64,000 nt of DNA from Magallana gigas (lineage: Eukaryota). Each line of letters begins with the position of its first letter. Within the stretch, counting starts at the first letter, position 1. The translations under genes and the position numbers were made by a program. The stretch lies in the NCBI RefSeq assembly GCF_963853765.1, contig NC_088858.1, positions 35,526,001 through 35,590,000 on the forward strand, written 5' to 3'. Below the pieces are notes generated by a model. The model did no database searches. It saw nothing but the letters and a program-made list of their open reading frames with translations, and had not been told where the DNA came from. Below, in pieces: positions 8,192-15,463 of the stretch.

Positions 8192-8360
8192 TGTTTAACT
8201 GTACATTGCATTGGTTGATATCAATATAAAAGTATAGTACCATTTATATAAACAATGCACTGATATGGAATATATAACAAAAGGTACATGTAATATGTTT
8301 AGATGATTTATGTATAAATGCATTGCATGTGAACATAAAAGACGGCTGGTATATGTACGT

Positions 8361-11300
8361 CTAGTAACCAAACTTCTTATTCAAATGGGTCTTCCCATCT
8401 CCTGACTGGTCTACAACAATTAAAAAAGTGAATGTTACGTAAATGTACCAATAATTGTTATATTTAATTACCAAAACATTAAAAGCATGATACATGTACA
8501 GTCATTTTAAAAACAAAGGTTAACTGAAATGTTCCTGTTAAAAAAAAAGGCACATCATGTTTCCAGTATTTCATAATTTAACAAAAAAAACCCAATAATT
8601 ATTAGGTAGTTGTAGATTAAACTTAATGTACATGTAAGAAGACTTGGGAAACCATTTGAATTTTTGATGGATAGAGAGTGGATGAAAGATCTTACTGCCT
8701 GGAGGGACCCACACAGCATAGTCTGGATCTTCTGATTGGTAATTTGGTCCTAGTTTTATCTCTGACTTCTTGACCTGTAATGAAAATTTTAAGATATTGA
8801 AATCAAGCACTTATATTACATGATAAGAATTATCGGTACATGTACTTATAACAAATTGTAATGTGAACCAGGACTGTGTTTTTCTATTTTTAAAAGAAGC
8901 ATATCTGAGGTAAAGCATTCTGAAAGATGGTTGACACTTCACAATAAAGAAGCGAGAAAACTTGGCATGTTTTCATGAAAAATATAAAAGCAAATCAAAG
9001 GCAATAGTAAATCTATGCATGTACATGCATACCTTTGGACGTTGATTTTTCTTCTTCTGTTTTTGTGAACTATCATTTTCCCCAGTAGAACCTTCCTGTA
9101 AGTTACTTCCTCTTAACTCTTTTCCCCTTAGAGGTTTCTATCCTTTAACCCTTAATGACGCGTTTTGACGACCCTGGCCATATCCTTAATGACGACTTTT
9201 GACGCACCCTATATACAGCTCTTAATTAGACCCCTCAACACCTGTTGTTTATTATAAACAATACTGGTATACACCTGGCCATGTATACGGATGGTTGTTC
9301 ACTCATTCTAAATAAAGATATCACGTGATTTACCTGTGTATGGTGGCGTGATGCATTACTACAATAAACAAAGATGGCGGACTACGATGCGGACATCGCA
9401 CATGTTTTCACTTTTTGTTTATAATCAAGTTTAGGGGCAGAATTTTCTAGATTTATTGGTAGTGAGATTGAATGATGAAAGCCAGATGTCAAATTCATGC
9501 AAAATTTTGTGGAAAAATCTGTGTAGTTACAGAAAACGGAACACAAGGTGTGCATTACCTGCAACCCCTAAATACACGAATATACCGGTAAATTTGTATT
9601 TTTTCAAAAAGTCAACACACTTATTTTGTTAACATGCTAGATTTATCAAATTCTCTTACACCATTTATTGAAAAAAATTCGTAAATATAAGTCTGAAAAC
9701 GATAGACTTAAATTGAAAAGTCAGCCACAGGTACATTTAATTATTCACTATCAAAAAACGAATTCCATGATGATAATGGAATCTTTGTATAAAAATTATT
9801 AAATAATTATTTGTAATACATACAGTTTTAAATATGTTTATCAAGTATCTGTTGTGAAATTATTCTTAATAAAGCTTTAATGTAGAACACTCAGTTTTAT
9901 TTTCATATACCTGTCAGCACCTGTATTGCTTTATTAGTGACTTAAATAATTTTTTTTTCAATGAATATTAAAACTTTAATTTATTACAAATCCATTGATA
10001 TATAATTTTCTATGTGTTTGATTTGCTAAGACCTGTAATAAGTCTATTCAAAAACACACACCAGCTGTTTTCACTTCATCTGAAAACAGTCTAAGGGTAG
10101 CCCAGGGTAGTGTGTTAAGGATATGGCCTATGCGTCAAAAGGTGGCATTAAGGGGTAAAGAGTTAACTCAGGAGGAAATGCAGGGCCTTTCACCACAGGA
10201 ACATTTTTGTCCACTGATTTAGAAGTCTGTTTTACACTATTGTCTTTCTCAGTCACATGTTCACCCTGAGGAGACACTAAAGCAGTGTTCTTAACACTAT
10301 TAGTCTCATTTTGTTCCTCTGACACAGTCTTGTTCTCAGACACAGTATTCTCCCCTGGAGCACCTGTTGAGGAGGAGCGACTTATTTCTGAGATCTCCAT
10401 TGGTGTGTCCTCATCTTCCTCCTCCTCCACTATGTTGCCTTCACTCTCAGGTGGTTTTTGAGAAGGAGACTAGAAAACACACACACACAGTGGTACATGT
10501 ATGTACATGTAAATTACGGACAAATACATAATGGAACATATTTCTAAACCAAAAAAAATAATCTATTTTATGATCTATCTACAGTTTGTATTCCATGGTT
10601 GTATGTACATGTAAGTCACTCACTTTACATTTATGAATGCTCACTTGTACTTGCCAGTACATCTATTTTAAATAAACATTGTACTTTGGCATTTATGAAG
10701 ATAAATGAAGAAAAGATTAATACAAACAAATAATACAATTATTACCGTAGGCTTTGTATTTCCAACTGGTTTTCTAAGTCTACTAAATGTAAGTGAAGCT
10801 TTGTCCGTCTTGGCTTTCTCTGTAGAACTAGAAAAAATAAATATTCCAAAATTAATCCTGACCACTCAAATCTTAAGTTCATACACTGTACATCAACTTA
10901 TGATTCAACCGTAATTTTTCTGACTTACATGTATTACATTTACATGAACAATAAAGTTGGCAAATCAAGTAGATGTATGAAATTTTGAACCTTTTGAGGT
11001 CTGGTAAGGCTGCTGGCTTGGCCACATTGACCATTCTCTGGAGTTTCTGTTCCTCCTTTTTCAGTTCCAAAAGCTGTCTCTTCAGCTTCATCTTTGTTTT
11101 GGTGTCCATGACTCCTGACTTAATGGCCGACATGTAGGCGTCCAGGGCATCCATTCCATCCTCCTGCATGGCTTCTGTCTCTGTTCAAAGCAATAATAAA
11201 TAATACTAGATTGATTTCTGGTACTCTCTGTTTTAATGTCATACATGTATATCAAATATCATATATATTTTTTTTATCATTTTCAAAAAAATATATTTCT

Positions 11301-14300
11301 TTTTAGTTTTGAAATTATTGATTTTATTTTTAAGAATGATGAATGTTAAGGTAAATATTTGTAGATACATTGTGTATTTATAAAACTGTCTTTTAAAAAT
11401 TACAAACAAGGAAGAAATGAAAAACCTCATTTAAAAAAATTACATTAATAAATTATAAAATCAAATGTAGACTGATGTCTGCACAAATGAACCATCAGTC
11501 AAGTATACATATCAGTGATTCAGTTGAACTTCGATATCTCAAACACTGATATCTTGAATACAATGGATATGTCAAATTGATTTGTAAATTCCAGCCACTT
11601 ATTTTCTTAGTATTTCACCCTCAATATCTCGAATACTGGGATATCTCGAAGTTTTTAAACAGTCCCATCTAGTTCAAGATAATGAAGTTTGACTGTATTT
11701 AGTTTTGACCAATGCTTCATCTATAATTACAAATATTGCTTGCAAGAAGTATTGTGGAGTAATATTAAAGATAATAAACTACGTACATATTTTGTTAATT
11801 TAAAACTGAATAATACCAGTAAGCATATTTCTTTGAATTTTTTTTATGAGTTTCTGTAGTGTACAGTATTTTCTCCAATATTTCAAAGGCACCAAGACAT
11901 GTTTTGGTTCTAAAACTGATTACATATAATACAATGTACAAATCCAGTACCTTTCTTTGCTTTGGCTATGTTTTCTTCAATTTCCTTGATTTCTTTTTGA
12001 ATGTTGCTTAATTTTTCCAGCTGTAAGTTTTATAAAATTAATTAATTCAATAGCATTTGATAATTTTACCAATAGAAATCTTTTTTTAAATACATGTATC
12101 CCTAAAATATAAATATTAATAATTGATTTTACCAGAGACTCGTAAGTCTCCACTTGGTTGTTAAGTTTTCCTGCTTTCTCCATTCTTTGTTTCCTTTTCT
12201 TTTCAATGTCTCCAGTTCTGTCCAGAAATGTATCATCATCACTGTCATAATAATCATCATCCTCCCAGTTCTTTTTCTTTCTCTTCCGACTTTCTGTAGT
12301 GAAAAATTCATGGAGTTCTTTAAATGACACTGATGATGCAAAATGGCATGAACATGTACATATATTTACATACATGTATTGAACTGCCCATCCACCTTCA
12401 CTTTTTACATTCACATTTTATCAATTGACCAACCAATTCATATCCCTGTGAACTTCTTGACATTGCTGTTTATTTCTTTAATGACTATATCTCAGTGGTA
12501 AGACATGATATATCAACTGTTCAGGATTGAAGGCTTGTGCCCTTACTCTACCACTCGTAACTTTTTCTATACAATCGCCACTTCTTCATATTTTCAGATT
12601 ATACAACTCAACTTCCATAACTTTGTAAATACAATTGTAAAATTTCTTTGATTACAAAGTATGAAGAACAGACATTGAACATCTTGAGGAAGACAACAAC
12701 ATTTGAAGCATATCGGGTTGAGGATCGGACCTTACCATGAGTTGCTGCCCTTAGTAGCCCCATTCTATCCAAGAGTCTACAAGCCTCCAAAGCACACTGA
12801 ATTACAGCTTCTTTCTTCTTCCCTGACACAATTGCTTCTGCCACCATTGCCTCCCCTGTGGGAGAGTCTACAGGTAATCTAAAGAGAAGAAAAATATTTA
12901 ACCATAAAGAATAAGTCTTGTTTTCATTTTTTTTTTTATCATAGTACAGAAATTTTGAGCAATTGTGGACTTACTCAACAATGCATTTAAATTTTCCATT
13001 GCCATTTTCTTGAACATTGTACTCTGGTTCATCATACCCTAAAACAGAAAATACATGATGCTAGCCAAACATTTTTTTTTAACTGATAACATCAGTATGT
13101 GTGCTTTTATGATGACCATATACTACTTAAACATTGAAAGTTTCTAATCTATTTGTCATTTTTTTCAGATAGTGATACCTTCTCTTTCAAAAAATCCTTT
13201 TAGTGCTTTTTTAGGATCATCTATATACAGCTTTTCATTCTCTGGGTTGTTGATGATGTTTGCAAAAGGGTTTTCACCTTCATCTTCCTCTGCATCATCA
13301 CCTACAAAATACATATAAAGAATATTTTCACCACTGATTGTATGTTTAGAAAAATTCAGCATATAAAATAGCTGATAGAAAAATGTAACCAGTTCTCAAA
13401 CTATTTTATTAATAAAATGGAATGTCTGTTTAAAATTTAGAGGGAAGAAATATGAATAGATCTTTAGTTTAAGTATATATGTAAATGCAACAAAAAATAC
13501 ATGTAATTGCATTTGGATTTGCCAATAACCGACTTAATTTATTTTCCAATTGTGGATTGTTTAAATTAGTGTTGTACCTGAATTGAGAAATAAAGTAAAG
13601 AACTATATACAATAAGAGTTAAATTTGGCCCCCATAATTCCCGATTTTTTAAGTGTTTCGGGTACAATAAAATGTTAACTAATTTTTTTTAGAAGAGTTG
13701 ATATAAAATATATTTTTCATCTATTTATTTGATTTATTTGCACTCACTGGCAGTATATGACGTCAGAAGTGACGCCATTTTTATAATTCAATCAAAATCA
13801 GCCAAAAATTGACATTTTTCTTTCTATTTACGAATGGGAAATATAGAGCGCATGCTTGAACAAGGAAAATTTTTTTTGTCAGTTATTAGTCTTGGCTAGA
13901 TACATGTCTGATTAAAATATTTTATTTGTTCAAGAATGCGCTCTATGTTTTCGGAAGGAAAAACTGCTTGAAAACAAGCTGTTTTACGCTAAAAATGCAA
14001 AAATGGCGGGAAAAGGTTGTCTTTACAATGTCGTATTTCTAAATTGTGGGCACTTGAACCAAAATGAATATTATGTAAACACATCAAATATATATCTGTA
14101 CTAAGAAATCAAAGAATGATAGTAAAATGATGATGTTCATTTTAGGGGGCCATTTTAGGCCCTTATCATATATAGTCCATTACTGAAGTTCTTTGCAAAG
14201 TTTTTTTTATAAAAAAAATGGGCACTCCAGACGATGATTAGCAGCTGAAAATAGAATGGAAAGGATGAAATGGGAAGGGAGAGTAAGTTAACTTTAAATT

Positions 14301-15463
14301 CTTGTTTATACCTATTCCCCAGGAACATCCTCTGGCTTCCTCTTTGGCTTTTAATTCCTGGATCTTCCTTTCTTCTTCAGCCTGTTCTGCTTGTCTTAGG
14401 AAATCTGCCTCTCTCTTTTGTTTTTCTCTCTGTTGTTTCATCTCCTCTACACTAAGATTTGACTCCTCTTCTCTATCATCCTCTGGTCCCTATGATCAGA
14501 ATATGTTTTCAATATGAATAAAGGTATGTATTTAGAATGTATTGTAACATTTGTAAATGTATTAGATTCATCTCCTCAAAAATTTATCTTTAGTACCTGT
14601 ATAAAAAATTATTAGTAGTAATTTGAAAGTTGGATACATGATAAACAGTTACCTAAAAAGAAAATGCCTTCCTTATCCATCAGCTTTTTCATCTACAATT
14701 TATTTTTGCCTCTTTAAAATATTTGCAACGGCATGATTCTTACCTGTAAAATATGTAATCTAGAACTCCCACCAAATTTCAGGACATGACCCACTCGAAT
14801 TCTGTAATATTTTTTAGGGTACACTTTGTTTTTGTTTATCCAGGTACCATGTGTACTGTCTAGATCATACAGATACCATCCCTTTTCTTGCTCTGGGGTG
14901 GGAGTCTTGCAGAACTGAACGACAGCATGGTGTCGAGACAACGACGGGTGTTCCATGGGGACATCACAGCTTGGCAGTCTTCCGAACACAATGAAGGATT
15001 TATCTAACTTAACATTGTCAATAATTGTCCCATTTTTCAACACTTCAAATCTATATTCCTCCTCAGCGATGCCACCCCATGAGGGTTCTTTGTAAGGGAT
15101 GGCAATCCGGGATTGTTGAAGCTGCTCAGCCGGTGATAGTTTACTGAGAGGCTTAGACAAACTGGGTGCAGTGTCTGGAGACTTATGTTCTACTGTATAT
15201 TTGTTTTCAGTTTCTTCTGTTTTATCAGATGGTTCTGATTTACTGTTCTCTTTTTTCAAAGCATTGTCCGTTGGCGTAGTAATGACGTTTTTATCTTCTG
15301 TCCATTTAGGTTTACTAAGAGGTGGTAAAATGGGAGTTTTGAAATTAATGGGAGAATCTTTTTCAGTATTGCTCTTTATTTTTTCGGAACTTGTATCCTT
15401 TTCTGGCTTTAAATCACATGTTTTTTCAACCGAAACTTCAACTGCCTGAACTGGGTCTTCCAT
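8361..15463 (-). CDS. SLC4A1AP: Kanadaptin (FHA domain, dsRBD-like region, acidic and coiled regions); 12 coding exons, exon 10 interrupted by a transposon
   Basis: Exons: 15463-14744, 14489-14312, 13301-13179, 13038-12975, 12878-12736, 12293-12133, 12020-11951, 11180-10991, 10827-10746, [10469-10167 + 9116-9033], 8774-8696, 8410-8361. All GT-AG and phase-consistent, giving 748 aa. FHA motifs FGR...HPSLSRHHA...DLDSTHGTWIN are present. The C-terminus EDPDYAVWVPPGNQSGDGKTHLNKKFGY matches the conserved kanadaptin end. Confidence 0.93.
9113..10166. mobile_element. Non-autonomous piggyBac-like element with TTAA target-site duplication
   Basis: TTAA at 9113-9116 and 10163-10166. 14-bp TIRs ctctt(t/t)(t/a)cccctta with one mismatch. 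A subterminal motif ccttaatg..ttttgacg..ggccatatccttaa occurs at both ends in inverted orientation. No transposase ORF. Confidence 0.85.
11521..11695. mobile_element. Tc1/mariner(pogo)-type MITE in SLC4A1AP intron 7
   Basis: Imperfect inverted ends cagttgaacttcgatatctc / agataatgaagtttgactg, followed by TA on the right. Confidence 0.55.
13600..14178. mobile_element. MITE with ~37-bp imperfect TIRs in SLC4A1AP intron 2
   Basis: gaactatatacaataagagttaaatttggccccc versus the reverse complement of gggggccattttaggcccttatcatatatagtcc. No clear TSD. Confidence 0.6.

What the first reader, a model, noticed from the sequence alone, without database searches (positions are those of the whole stretch)
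9113..10166. piggyBac-like element sits inside a coding exon of kanadaptin and would truncate its conserved C-terminus
Seen in sequence: TTAA duplication, 14-bp TIRs and inverted subterminal repeats bracket 1,046 bp. Deleting the element and one TTAA gives ...PAFPPELRGSNLQEGSTGENDSSQKQKKKNQRPK, ending at a phase-0 donor (9033) that joins in frame to the exon at 8774 and on to the conserved DPDYAVWVPP..QSGDGKTHLNKKFGY end (748 aa). With the element retained, translation stops at 10128, and 69 C-terminal residues are replaced by 11 element-derived residues (690 aa). The downstream exons are still open with intact splice sites, which suggests a recent insertion (inference). Options: a segregating loss-of-function allele, or an element that is spliced out. 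A weak GA/gttaac donor at 10167 and an AG at 9112-9113 would give an in-frame product losing only two residues, but that acceptor lacks a pyrimidine tract.
Basis: partly seen in the sequence, partly recalled or inferred. Interest (0 to 1): 0.85.

Follow-up and report, generated by a model that had tools for sequence, protein, structure and literature searches.

The report
Jumping-gene insertion in oyster kanadaptin exon
In this Pacific oyster reference genome, a 1-kb non-coding piggyBac-type mobile element sits inside a protein-coding exon of the single-copy kanadaptin gene; other oysters lack it, so it is an ordinary but well-documented young insertion allele that probably cripples the gene copy carrying it.

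Summary
A 1,046-bp element (9117-10162) with TTAA duplicated on both sides and 14-bp inverted ends splits coding exon 10 of 12 of kanadaptin (minus strand).

- **Family.** The genome holds at least 22 more full-length copies with the same ends and unrelated flanks.
- **Superfamily.** Two longer elements share its terminal and subterminal repeats and encode a piggyBac transposase (PF13843). It is therefore a non-autonomous piggyBac derivative, not Kolobok.
- **Empty site.** It reads ...PPELRGS... with one TTAA. It occurs in genomic DNA contigs of two independent runs, in the 748-aa M. gigas and C. angulata proteins, and in every transcript-derived protein I could inspect. No examined run holds this copy.
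- **Family activity.** Three copies at different loci are 100% identical. A sister copy is inserted elsewhere in other oysters where this assembly has the empty TTAA.
- **Effect on the gene.** If the element is retained, translation stops 36 nt into it (690 aa), losing a C-terminal motif invariant from oyster to rat.
- **New point.** RefSeq's model for this assembly (XP_065944339.1, 751 aa) removes the element as a 1,041-nt GT..AG intron (+GKE). It uses the weakest donor and acceptor in the gene.
- **Untested.** No available RNA data came from a carrier, so what happens to the transcript is unknown.

Earlier scan notes list other piggyBac/TTAA elements in this genome, but none on this one.

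The parts
9117..10162 (-). Non-autonomous piggyBac-type element, 1,046 bp, 32.5% GC, no open stretch longer than 65 aa. Coordinates exclude the duplicated TTAA.
9113..9116 (.). TTAA target-site duplication, copy on the 3' side in gene sense
10163..10166 (.). TTAA target-site duplication, copy on the 5' side in gene sense. Its first T, together with exon base G10167, makes the GT of the RefSeq-model donor.
9117..9130 (+). 14-bp terminal inverted repeat CTCTTTTCCCCTTA. In gene sense it contains the AG (9128-9127) used as acceptor in the RefSeq model.
   Evidence: (I5)
10149..10162 (-). 14-bp terminal inverted repeat CTCTTTACCCCTTA (13 of 14 match the other end)
   Evidence: (I5)
9143..9206 (+). 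Subterminal repeats at the 'long-spacer' end: two direct copies of CCTTAATGACGnnTTTTGACG (9150-9170, 9184-9204), plus GGCCATATCCTTAA (9176-9189)
   Evidence: D3, I1, I4, I10; the same layout occurs in the transposase-bearing elements
10115..10160 (-). Subterminal repeats at the 'short-spacer' end: an inverted copy of the motif (10131-10153) and a perfect 14-bp partner (10115-10128)
10167..10469 (-). Kanadaptin exon 10, upstream part (SPSQKPPE...GPAFPPE)
9033..9112 (-). Kanadaptin exon 10, downstream part (RGSNLQ...NQRPK), ending at donor AAG|GTATGC
   Evidence: An RNA contig in X25 joins about 9031 to 8772.
10128..10130 (-). First in-frame stop (TAG) if the element is retained in the mRNA. The product is 690 aa, with 11 element-derived residues.
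9127..10167 (-). 1,041-nt GT..AG 'intron' of RefSeq model XP_065944339.1. It leaves 9 nt of the element's end in the mRNA (+GKE).
   Evidence: reproduces the 751-aa protein exactly from the window.
8361..15463 (-). Kanadaptin coding region, 12 coding exons in the empty allele: 15463-14744, 14489-14312, 13301-13179, 13038-12975, 12878-12736, 12293-12133, 12020-11951, 11180-10991, 10827-10746, 10469-9033 (split by the element), 8774-8696, 8410-8361
   Evidence: Single locus in the assembly.
8361..8774 (-). Exons 11 and 12, encoding the conserved C-terminal motif DPDYAVWVPPGNQSGDGKTHLNKKFGY, which is lost if translation stops in the element

Best explanation
A non-autonomous, internally deleted piggyBac element transposed by cut-and-paste into a TTAA inside coding exon 10 of the single-copy kanadaptin gene. 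The chromosome that became this reference assembly (Magallana/Crassostrea gigas) carries it.

**Status of the allele.** The empty site is the ancestral and common allele. The insertion is young and rare, possibly private to the sequenced animal.

**Effect on the gene (inferred, not shown).** Unspliced mRNA from the insertion allele reaches a stop codon 36 nt into the element.
- The product would lack the last 69 residues, including a motif invariant across animals.
- The stop lies upstream of two further exon junctions, so the message should also be a target for nonsense-mediated decay.
- The element carries 9 AATAAA/ATTAAA signals in sense, so premature polyadenylation is also possible.

The likeliest net effect is a loss-of-function or hypomorphic allele, carried like the other recessive load known in oysters.
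For: **Shown**
- Exact element ends and a 4-bp duplication are shared with at least 22 full-length copies at unrelated loci.
- Two longer elements, at C7:29888040-29893472 and C4:25612627-25615544, have the same terminal and subterminal repeat layout. They encode PF13843 transposases, with E-values of 1e-66 and 2e-62.
- The empty-site joint 9112->10163 (skips 1,050 bp, 4 shared letters) is seen in genomic contigs of runs X5 and X7, which come from different studies. The X5 contig includes both neighbouring introns and has the full local depth.
- At five positions where this copy differs from all other assembly copies (9261, 9746, 9787, 9915, 10111), X5 and X7 show no contig with the window's letter.
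- The 748-aa proteins of M. gigas and C. angulata, and the 748-aa and 680-aa transcript-derived cluster members I could read, have ...PPELRGSN....
- No indexed run held all junction words.
- The family is recently mobile. L010, L011 and L012 are 100% identical at three different loci.
- The assembly has an empty TTAA at C8:43902176 where RNA of run X21 carries a sister copy. That copy shares 5 of this copy's 7 'private' letters.
- The gene is single-copy in the assembly.
- The C-terminal motif has 15 invariant columns from oyster to rat.
- The stop is at 10130-10128.
- The GT/AG pair that could remove the element is the weakest in the gene: donor TGA|GTTAAC, and an acceptor with 6 of 18 pyrimidines against 9-15 for the other acceptors.
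Against: - No read or contig from any public run was found that bridges the exon-element junction of this copy. The insertion is therefore supported only by the assembly itself.
- No RNA from a carrier was available, so truncation or decay is inferred, not observed.
- RefSeq annotates the element as an intron with an intact 751-aa product.
- Whether the sequenced animal is heterozygous or homozygous is unknown.
- The transposase-bearing relatives seen in this assembly are both interrupted, by a frameshift and by a TGA. The current source of transposase is therefore not identified.
Confidence: 0.75

Rival explanations
1. The element is efficiently spliced out as a brand-new intron. The GT is made from the exon's G plus the first T of the duplicated TTAA. 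The AG lies 10 nt inside the terminal repeat. The result is a functional 751-aa protein with three extra residues (GKE), as in RefSeq XP_065944339.1.
For: - The RefSeq protein for this chromosome is reproduced exactly from the window using the intron 10167..9127.
- The intron is GT..AG and in frame.
- The insert falls in a poorly conserved, low-complexity part of the protein, 34-45% identical to other oyster genera.
Against: - Donor TGA|GTTAAC and the acceptor (6 of 18 pyrimidines) are the poorest of the 12 in the gene.
- Only the RefSeq genome model among the 15 listed members of the 42-member cluster contains GKE. The transcript-derived members I read in full (P0171, P0269) have PPELRGS, and the other listed ones are 748 aa, the empty-site length.
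- Gene-prediction pipelines can place such introns simply to keep a frame open (own knowledge).
- No RNA read supports the junction, although no carrier RNA was examined either.
Confidence: 0.13
2. The enlarged exon (1,437 nt instead of 387 nt) is skipped. Exon 9 (ending at 10746) joins exon 11 (starting at 8774) in frame. The protein would lack 129 poorly conserved residues but keep the conserved C-terminus.
For: - Both flanking introns are phase 0 and exon 10 is 387 nt, or 129 codons.
- Insertions into exons often cause exon skipping (general knowledge).
- Exon 10 is the least conserved part of the protein.
Against: - No joint from 10746 to 8774 appeared in any run, but those runs do not carry the insertion.
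- This rival is purely inferential.
Confidence: 0.08
3. The insertion is an assembly artefact, or a somatic event in the sequenced tissue, rather than a germline allele.
For: - No independent run was found with junction words: the best run held 3 of 5 sampled words, explicable without the junction.
- None of the four laid runs bridges the junction.
Against: - A mis-join would not create a perfect TTAA duplication at the exact family termini in an otherwise collinear exon.
- The copy has its own letters, 2 to 7 of them private, so it is not a pasted duplicate of another assembled copy.
- The junction search rested on very few words.
Confidence: 0.03
4. The element belongs to Kolobok, the other eukaryotic superfamily with TTAA duplications, not to piggyBac.
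For: - A TTAA duplication alone does not distinguish the two superfamilies (own knowledge).
- An earlier scan note, s1-356127, reports Kolobok-type TTAA elements in this genome.
Against: - Both longer elements with the same 14-bp ends and the same asymmetric subterminal repeats encode PF13843 piggyBac transposases. One of them, at 2.9 kb, leaves no room for a nested foreign element.
- The terminal repeat starts C-T-C, within the C[C/A/T][C/A/T] pattern reported for piggyBac-like elements (PMC5381638).
Confidence: 0.01

Closest known systems
piggyBac-like elements (PBLE) and their non-autonomous derivatives, as surveyed in Bouallegue et al. 2017 (PMC5381638)
   Same: - TTAA duplication, with occasional other 4-bp sites.
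- 12-19-bp terminal repeats beginning C[C/A/T][C/A/T].
- Asymmetric subterminal repeats, one adjacent to the terminal repeat and one about 28-31 bp away.
- Relatives encoding a DDE_Tnp_1_7 transposase.
   Different: - This copy has no transposase, and its interior is unrelated to the coding elements.
- The ~1 kb length is above the usual size of a miniature element.
- Copy number is modest, about 25 full copies.
- I could not check whether the family already has a Repbase or Dfam name.
Classical transposon-insertion null alleles in coding exons, for example the baculovirus FP mutants through which piggyBac was discovered (cited in PMC5381638)
   Same: Cut-and-paste insertion at a TTAA inside an open reading frame, with a premature stop a few codons into the element.
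   Different: - Here it is a natural allele of a conserved nuclear FHA-domain gene, fixed into a reference assembly.
- Its phenotype and frequency are unknown.
Introner-type DNA transposons that create new spliceosomal introns, reported in algae, fungi and some animals (recalled from memory, not checked here)
   Same: One splice site could come from the element (AG in the terminal repeat). The other could come from the target site (G + TTAA gives GT), and removal would leave a multiple of three (+9 nt).
   Different: - The splice signals are very weak.
- No transcript evidence exists, and there is no sign that other family copies behave as introns.
- The resemblance currently rests only on a gene-prediction model.
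[quoted passage not shown]
   Same: - FHA domain, E 1e-35 to 4h87.
- A double-stranded-RNA-binding-like fold (Dicer_dimer hit).
- The invariant C-terminal motif.
   Different: This is the oyster orthologue, whose exon 10 region is fast-evolving. The function of the C-terminal motif is unknown.

Membership tests
piggyBac superfamily (non-autonomous member) | 4-bp TTAA target-site duplication | tested here: met
   TTAA lies on both sides of this copy and of 19 of the 21 other full-length copies whose flanks I read. Those other two have CTAG on both sides.
piggyBac superfamily (non-autonomous member) | Short terminal inverted repeats (12-19 bp) beginning C[C/A/T][C/A/T] | tested here: met
   14 bp, 13 of 14 matching, starting CTC. 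The criterion is taken from PMC5381638.
piggyBac superfamily (non-autonomous member) | Asymmetric subterminal inverted repeats (short spacer at one end, about 30-bp spacer at the other) | tested here: met
   The motif directly follows the terminal repeat at the 10162 end. At the 9117 end it follows after about 28 nt. The same layout occurs in L043 and L044.
piggyBac superfamily (non-autonomous member) | Termini shared with an element encoding a DDE_Tnp_1_7 (PF13843) transposase | tested here: met
   L043 shares 230-280 bp at both ends at 78-82% identity. L044 shares 37-90 bp at its ends (78-95% identity). Both contain PF13843 open frames. Both transposase genes are interrupted in this assembly.
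piggyBac superfamily (non-autonomous member) | Precise excision restoring a single TTAA | tested here: inconclusive
   The empty alleles have exactly one TTAA. That is equally expected for a site that was never occupied.
Miniature inverted-repeat element (strict sense) | Length below about 800 bp and high copy number | tested here: not met
   The element is 1,046 bp. There are about 25 full copies and 77 termini. It is better called a non-autonomous deletion derivative.
Kolobok superfamily | Kolobok-type transposase in related autonomous copies | tested here: not met
   The related coding elements carry PF13843, the piggyBac transposase.
Kanadaptin (SLC4A1AP) orthologue | FHA domain, central dsRBD-like fold, conserved C-terminal motif, and best matches named kanadaptin | tested here: met
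   - PF00498 at 1.7e-18 and PF03368 at 7e-8.
- 4h87 kanadaptin FHA at 1e-35.
- C-terminal alignment.
- Named orthologues in molluscs through mammals.
- Single locus in the assembly.
Transposon-derived new intron (introner-like) | Transcripts of carriers in which the element is removed at defined GT..AG sites | not testable with these tools
   The sites exist (10167-10166 GT, 9128-9127 AG) and RefSeq models them. No carrier RNA was found, and the single read-laying run was already spent.

The most novel reading that the evidence does not exclude
The insertion is a nascent spliceosomal intron.

- Any copy of this family landing after a G at a TTAA gains a GT at its 5' edge.
- Both terminal repeats carry an AG 10 nt from the end.
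- Removal would therefore always leave +9 nt, preserving the frame.

On this reading, a piggyBac derivative would be caught in the act of creating an intron in a conserved animal gene.
Probability: 0.1. Interest if true: 0.7.

Novelty: new member of a known kind. Interest (0 to 1): 0.3.

Why it matters
**Practical consequence**
- The reference chromosome of the Pacific oyster carries a rare insertion allele at kanadaptin.
- The RefSeq protein for this assembly (751 aa) contains three residues translated from a transposon end.
- Users should prefer the 748-aa form.

**Biological points**
- It is a clean example of a currently mobile piggyBac-type family in an oyster: identical copies at different loci and reciprocal presence/absence sites.
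- It shows transposon insertions contributing to the heavy load of recessive damaging alleles for which oysters are known.
- It offers a natural, easily genotyped candidate knock-out of kanadaptin's invariant C-terminal motif. The function of that protein is still unknown (PMC4157861).

Tried and rejected
**Searches that were weak or blank**
1. The look-up of sequencing runs failed twice as busy.
2. The 80-nt junction query gave only 5 sampled words. The best holder, X25, had 3 of 5, which is explicable without the junction, because words starting at the TTAA also exist in the empty allele. This is weak evidence of rarity, not proof.
3. The raw polyA RNA run X21 had only 1-3 reads on kanadaptin exons and none on 8300-9082. 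It therefore says nothing about how the insertion allele is processed.
4. The look-up of encoding contigs for the RefSeq protein returned nothing. Records of the window's own genome are withheld. I matched the contig length instead.
It was replaced by exact peptide matching and explicit boundary testing.

**Leads followed and dropped**
6. X25 contig 9597-9740 is identical to the window, including letter 9708T, which is 'private' among the assembly's copies. I considered it evidence that X25 carries and retains the element. I rejected this because run X5, which has the empty site at full depth, also has that letter. In addition, X25 shows only non-window letters at 9261, 9746, 9787 and 10111, and its element contigs run into the flanks of copy L014.
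7. The joint '10471->10748, AG..CG' looked like a non-canonical intron. It is an alignment shift caused by SNP 10747 (Thr/Lys at residue 577). The true intron, 10745..10470, is GT..AG.

**What cannot be concluded**
8. Dating the insertion from the copy's divergence (1.7% from the majority, 7 private letters) is not valid for a cut-and-paste element. Five of the seven letters are shared with a copy absent from the assembly.
9. An intact 585-aa piggyBac transposase at C6:46218561 has terminal repeats starting CTCTTTCCC. It is only 40% identical to the partner lineage, so whether it mobilises this family is speculation.

Full report
**1. The observation**

On the minus strand the exon reads ...CCTCCTGAG|TTAA|CTCTTTACCCCTTA... 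and, 1,046 bp later...TAAGGGGAAAAGAG|TTAA|GAGGAAGT....
- TTAA is therefore duplicated at 10163-10166 and at 9113-9116.
- The ends are 14-bp inverted repeats matching at 13 of 14 positions. Further subterminal inverted and direct repeats are present (I5, I1, I4, I10, D3).
- Deleting the element and one TTAA restores an open frame, ...GPAFPPELRGSNLQEGSTGENDSSQKQKKKNQRPK, which ends at a GT donor.
- With the element retained, the frame reads ...PPELTLYPLMPPFDA and stops at TAG 10130-10128.

**2. It is a mobile-element family, not chance**

A search of the window's own 564-Mb assembly found 44 matches. They include 23 full-length copies at 93-100% identity and one rearranged full-length match at 89%.
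- The 21 other full-length copies whose flanks I read end at exactly the same bases, with unrelated flanks.
- Nineteen of them have TTAA on both sides and two have CTAG on both sides.
- The terminus pattern occurs 77 times, against 8 for the reversed control.
- The element is AT-rich and has no open stretch longer than 65 aa. It is therefore non-autonomous.

**3. Superfamily**

The genome holds many PF13843 (piggyBac transposase) matches. Two such elements carry the same termini as the element here.
- One lies at C7:29888040-29893472 (5,433 bp, locus L043). It shares 230-280 bp at both ends at 78-82% identity.
- The other lies at C4:25612627-25615544 (2,918 bp, locus L044).
- Their open frames hit PF13843 at 1e-66 and 2e-62.
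- The terminal layout is the same in all three elements. At one end the subterminal motif abuts the terminal repeat. At the other it follows after about 28 nt.
- This is the asymmetry described for piggyBac, and the CTC start fits the C[C/A/T][C/A/T] pattern (PMC5381638).

Kolobok, which also duplicates TTAA, is thereby excluded. An earlier scan note prompted that check. Both transposase genes are interrupted in this assembly, and the lineage has only these two members here.

**4. The gene**

Phmmer and word searches identify kanadaptin.
- The closest cluster holds M. gigas and C. angulata kanadaptins of 748 aa, plus about 35 transcript-derived sequences.
- Pfam finds FHA and a Dicer_dimer-type fold.
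- The FHA domain matches the human kanadaptin structure 4h87 at 1e-35.
- Exact peptide matching and boundary testing give 12 coding exons. The element lies in exon 10.
- The gene is single-copy in the assembly.
- The last two exons encode DPDYAVWVPPGNQSGDGKTHLNKKFGY. That stretch has 15 invariant columns among oysters, a freshwater mussel, a brachiopod, an octopus, a cockroach, a shark, a rat and amphioxus.

**5. The empty allele exists as DNA and is the common form**

I laid two DNA-type contig sets (X5, X7), one RNA contig set (X25) and one raw polyA RNA run (X21) on 8300-10900.
- A joint 9112->10163 skipping 1,050 bp, with 4 ambiguous letters (the TTAA), appears in both X5 and X7.
- In X5 it sits on a 931-nt contig that also contains the two neighbouring introns. 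Its depth of 47.3 equals the local single-copy depth.
- In X7 the contig runs 37 nt past the joint, up to an ordinary SNP bubble. There is thus no branch at the insertion site.
- At five positions where this copy differs from every other assembled copy (9261, 9746, 9787, 9915, 10111), X5 and X7 show no contig with the window's letter.
- The proteins XP_011419428, K1QNW6 and C. angulata XP_052702121 read ...PPELRGSN..., as do the two transcript-derived members read in full, P0171 (748 aa) and P0269 (680 aa).
- An 80-nt junction query found no run holding all sampled words. That search was weak.

**6. The family is recently active**

- Copies L010, L011 and L012 are 100% identical over 1,063 bp at three loci with different flanks.
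- In X21, abundant strand-biased RNA reads cover the element and run into flanks that are not kanadaptin's.
- Those flanks lie at C8:43902176 in this assembly, where they are separated by a single TTAA. That is a reciprocal presence/absence polymorphism.
- The X21 copy shares 5 of the 7 'private' letters of the kanadaptin copy. Only two letters are left unique to the kanadaptin copy.

**7. Consequence for the gene (inferred)**

- Retention gives a 690-aa product lacking the invariant C-terminus.
- The stop lies upstream of two exon junctions, so nonsense-mediated decay is expected from general knowledge.
- Nine polyadenylation hexamers lie in sense within the element.

**8. The RefSeq model**

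- The window's chromosome is 56,905,015 bp long. That is the contig length recorded for XP_065944339.1, the 751-aa kanadaptin of M. gigas.
- That protein is reproduced exactly from the window when 10167..9127 is removed as a GT..AG intron. This inserts GKE between PPE and LRGS.
- The GT is formed by the exon's G plus the first T of the TTAA. The AG lies in the terminal repeat.
- Donor TGA|GTTAAC and the acceptor (6 of 18 pyrimidines, against 9-15 elsewhere in the gene) are the weakest in the gene.
- Among the 15 listed cluster members, only the RefSeq genome model carries GKE.
- I therefore treat this intron as a probable annotation device. It is the one reading that would make the locus really interesting, and it is untested.

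**9. Limits**

- No independent read supports the junctions of this copy.
- The zygosity of the specimen and the allele's frequency are unknown.
- No RNA from a carrier was examined, because the read-laying tool allowed only one call.

Noticed in passing
L054 (G000:C8:43902176-43902205 and the next 40 nt): This assembly has an empty TTAA site exactly where the polyA RNA reads of run X21 carry a copy of the same element family. That copy is transcribed far above kanadaptin (depth 100-280 against 1-3) and with strong strand bias. It is a second, reciprocal insertion polymorphism inside a transcribed region.
   Followed up: partly
L010 (C4:44254955-44256017), L011 (C2:37912210-37913272), L012 (C2:36394217-36395279): Three copies of the family are 100% identical over 1,063 bp and have different flanks. 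This points to very recent transposition.
   Followed up: yes
L020 (C5:54514530-54515593) and L023 (C8:7529530-7530580): Two full-length copies are flanked by CTAG on both sides instead of TTAA. This is a non-canonical palindromic target for a piggyBac-type element.
   Followed up: no
L043 (C7:29888040-29893472) and L044 (C4:25612627-25615544): These are the transposase-bearing relatives of the element. The 5.4-kb copy has its PF13843 frame split into overlapping 455-aa and 160-aa pieces. The 2.9-kb copy has one in-frame TGA. No intact member of this lineage was seen in the assembly.
   Followed up: partly
L031 (C6:46217968-46220330 approx.): A 2.4-kb piggyBac carries an uninterrupted 585-aa transposase frame and terminal repeats starting CTCTTTCCC, similar to the tips of the element studied. 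One flank reads TTAA and the other ATAA. It is a possible source of transposase in trans.
   Followed up: no
L014 (C5:25960620-25961688): This copy of the family is present in the RNA contigs of run X25, with 25-26 nt of its own flanks. It is therefore transcribed as part of some host transcript.
   Followed up: no
window 10747: A common G>T SNP on the plus strand changes residue 577 from Thr (this assembly) to Lys (most public sequences). It shifts the aligner's placement of the exon 9/10 joint by two bases.
   Followed up: yes
window 10200-10328: Seven linked SNPs define two exon-10 haplotypes, both present in X7 (DNA) and X25 (RNA) at similar depth. One is identical to the window's haplotype, yet X7 has no insertion. 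The insertion is therefore younger than its haplotype background.
   Followed up: partly
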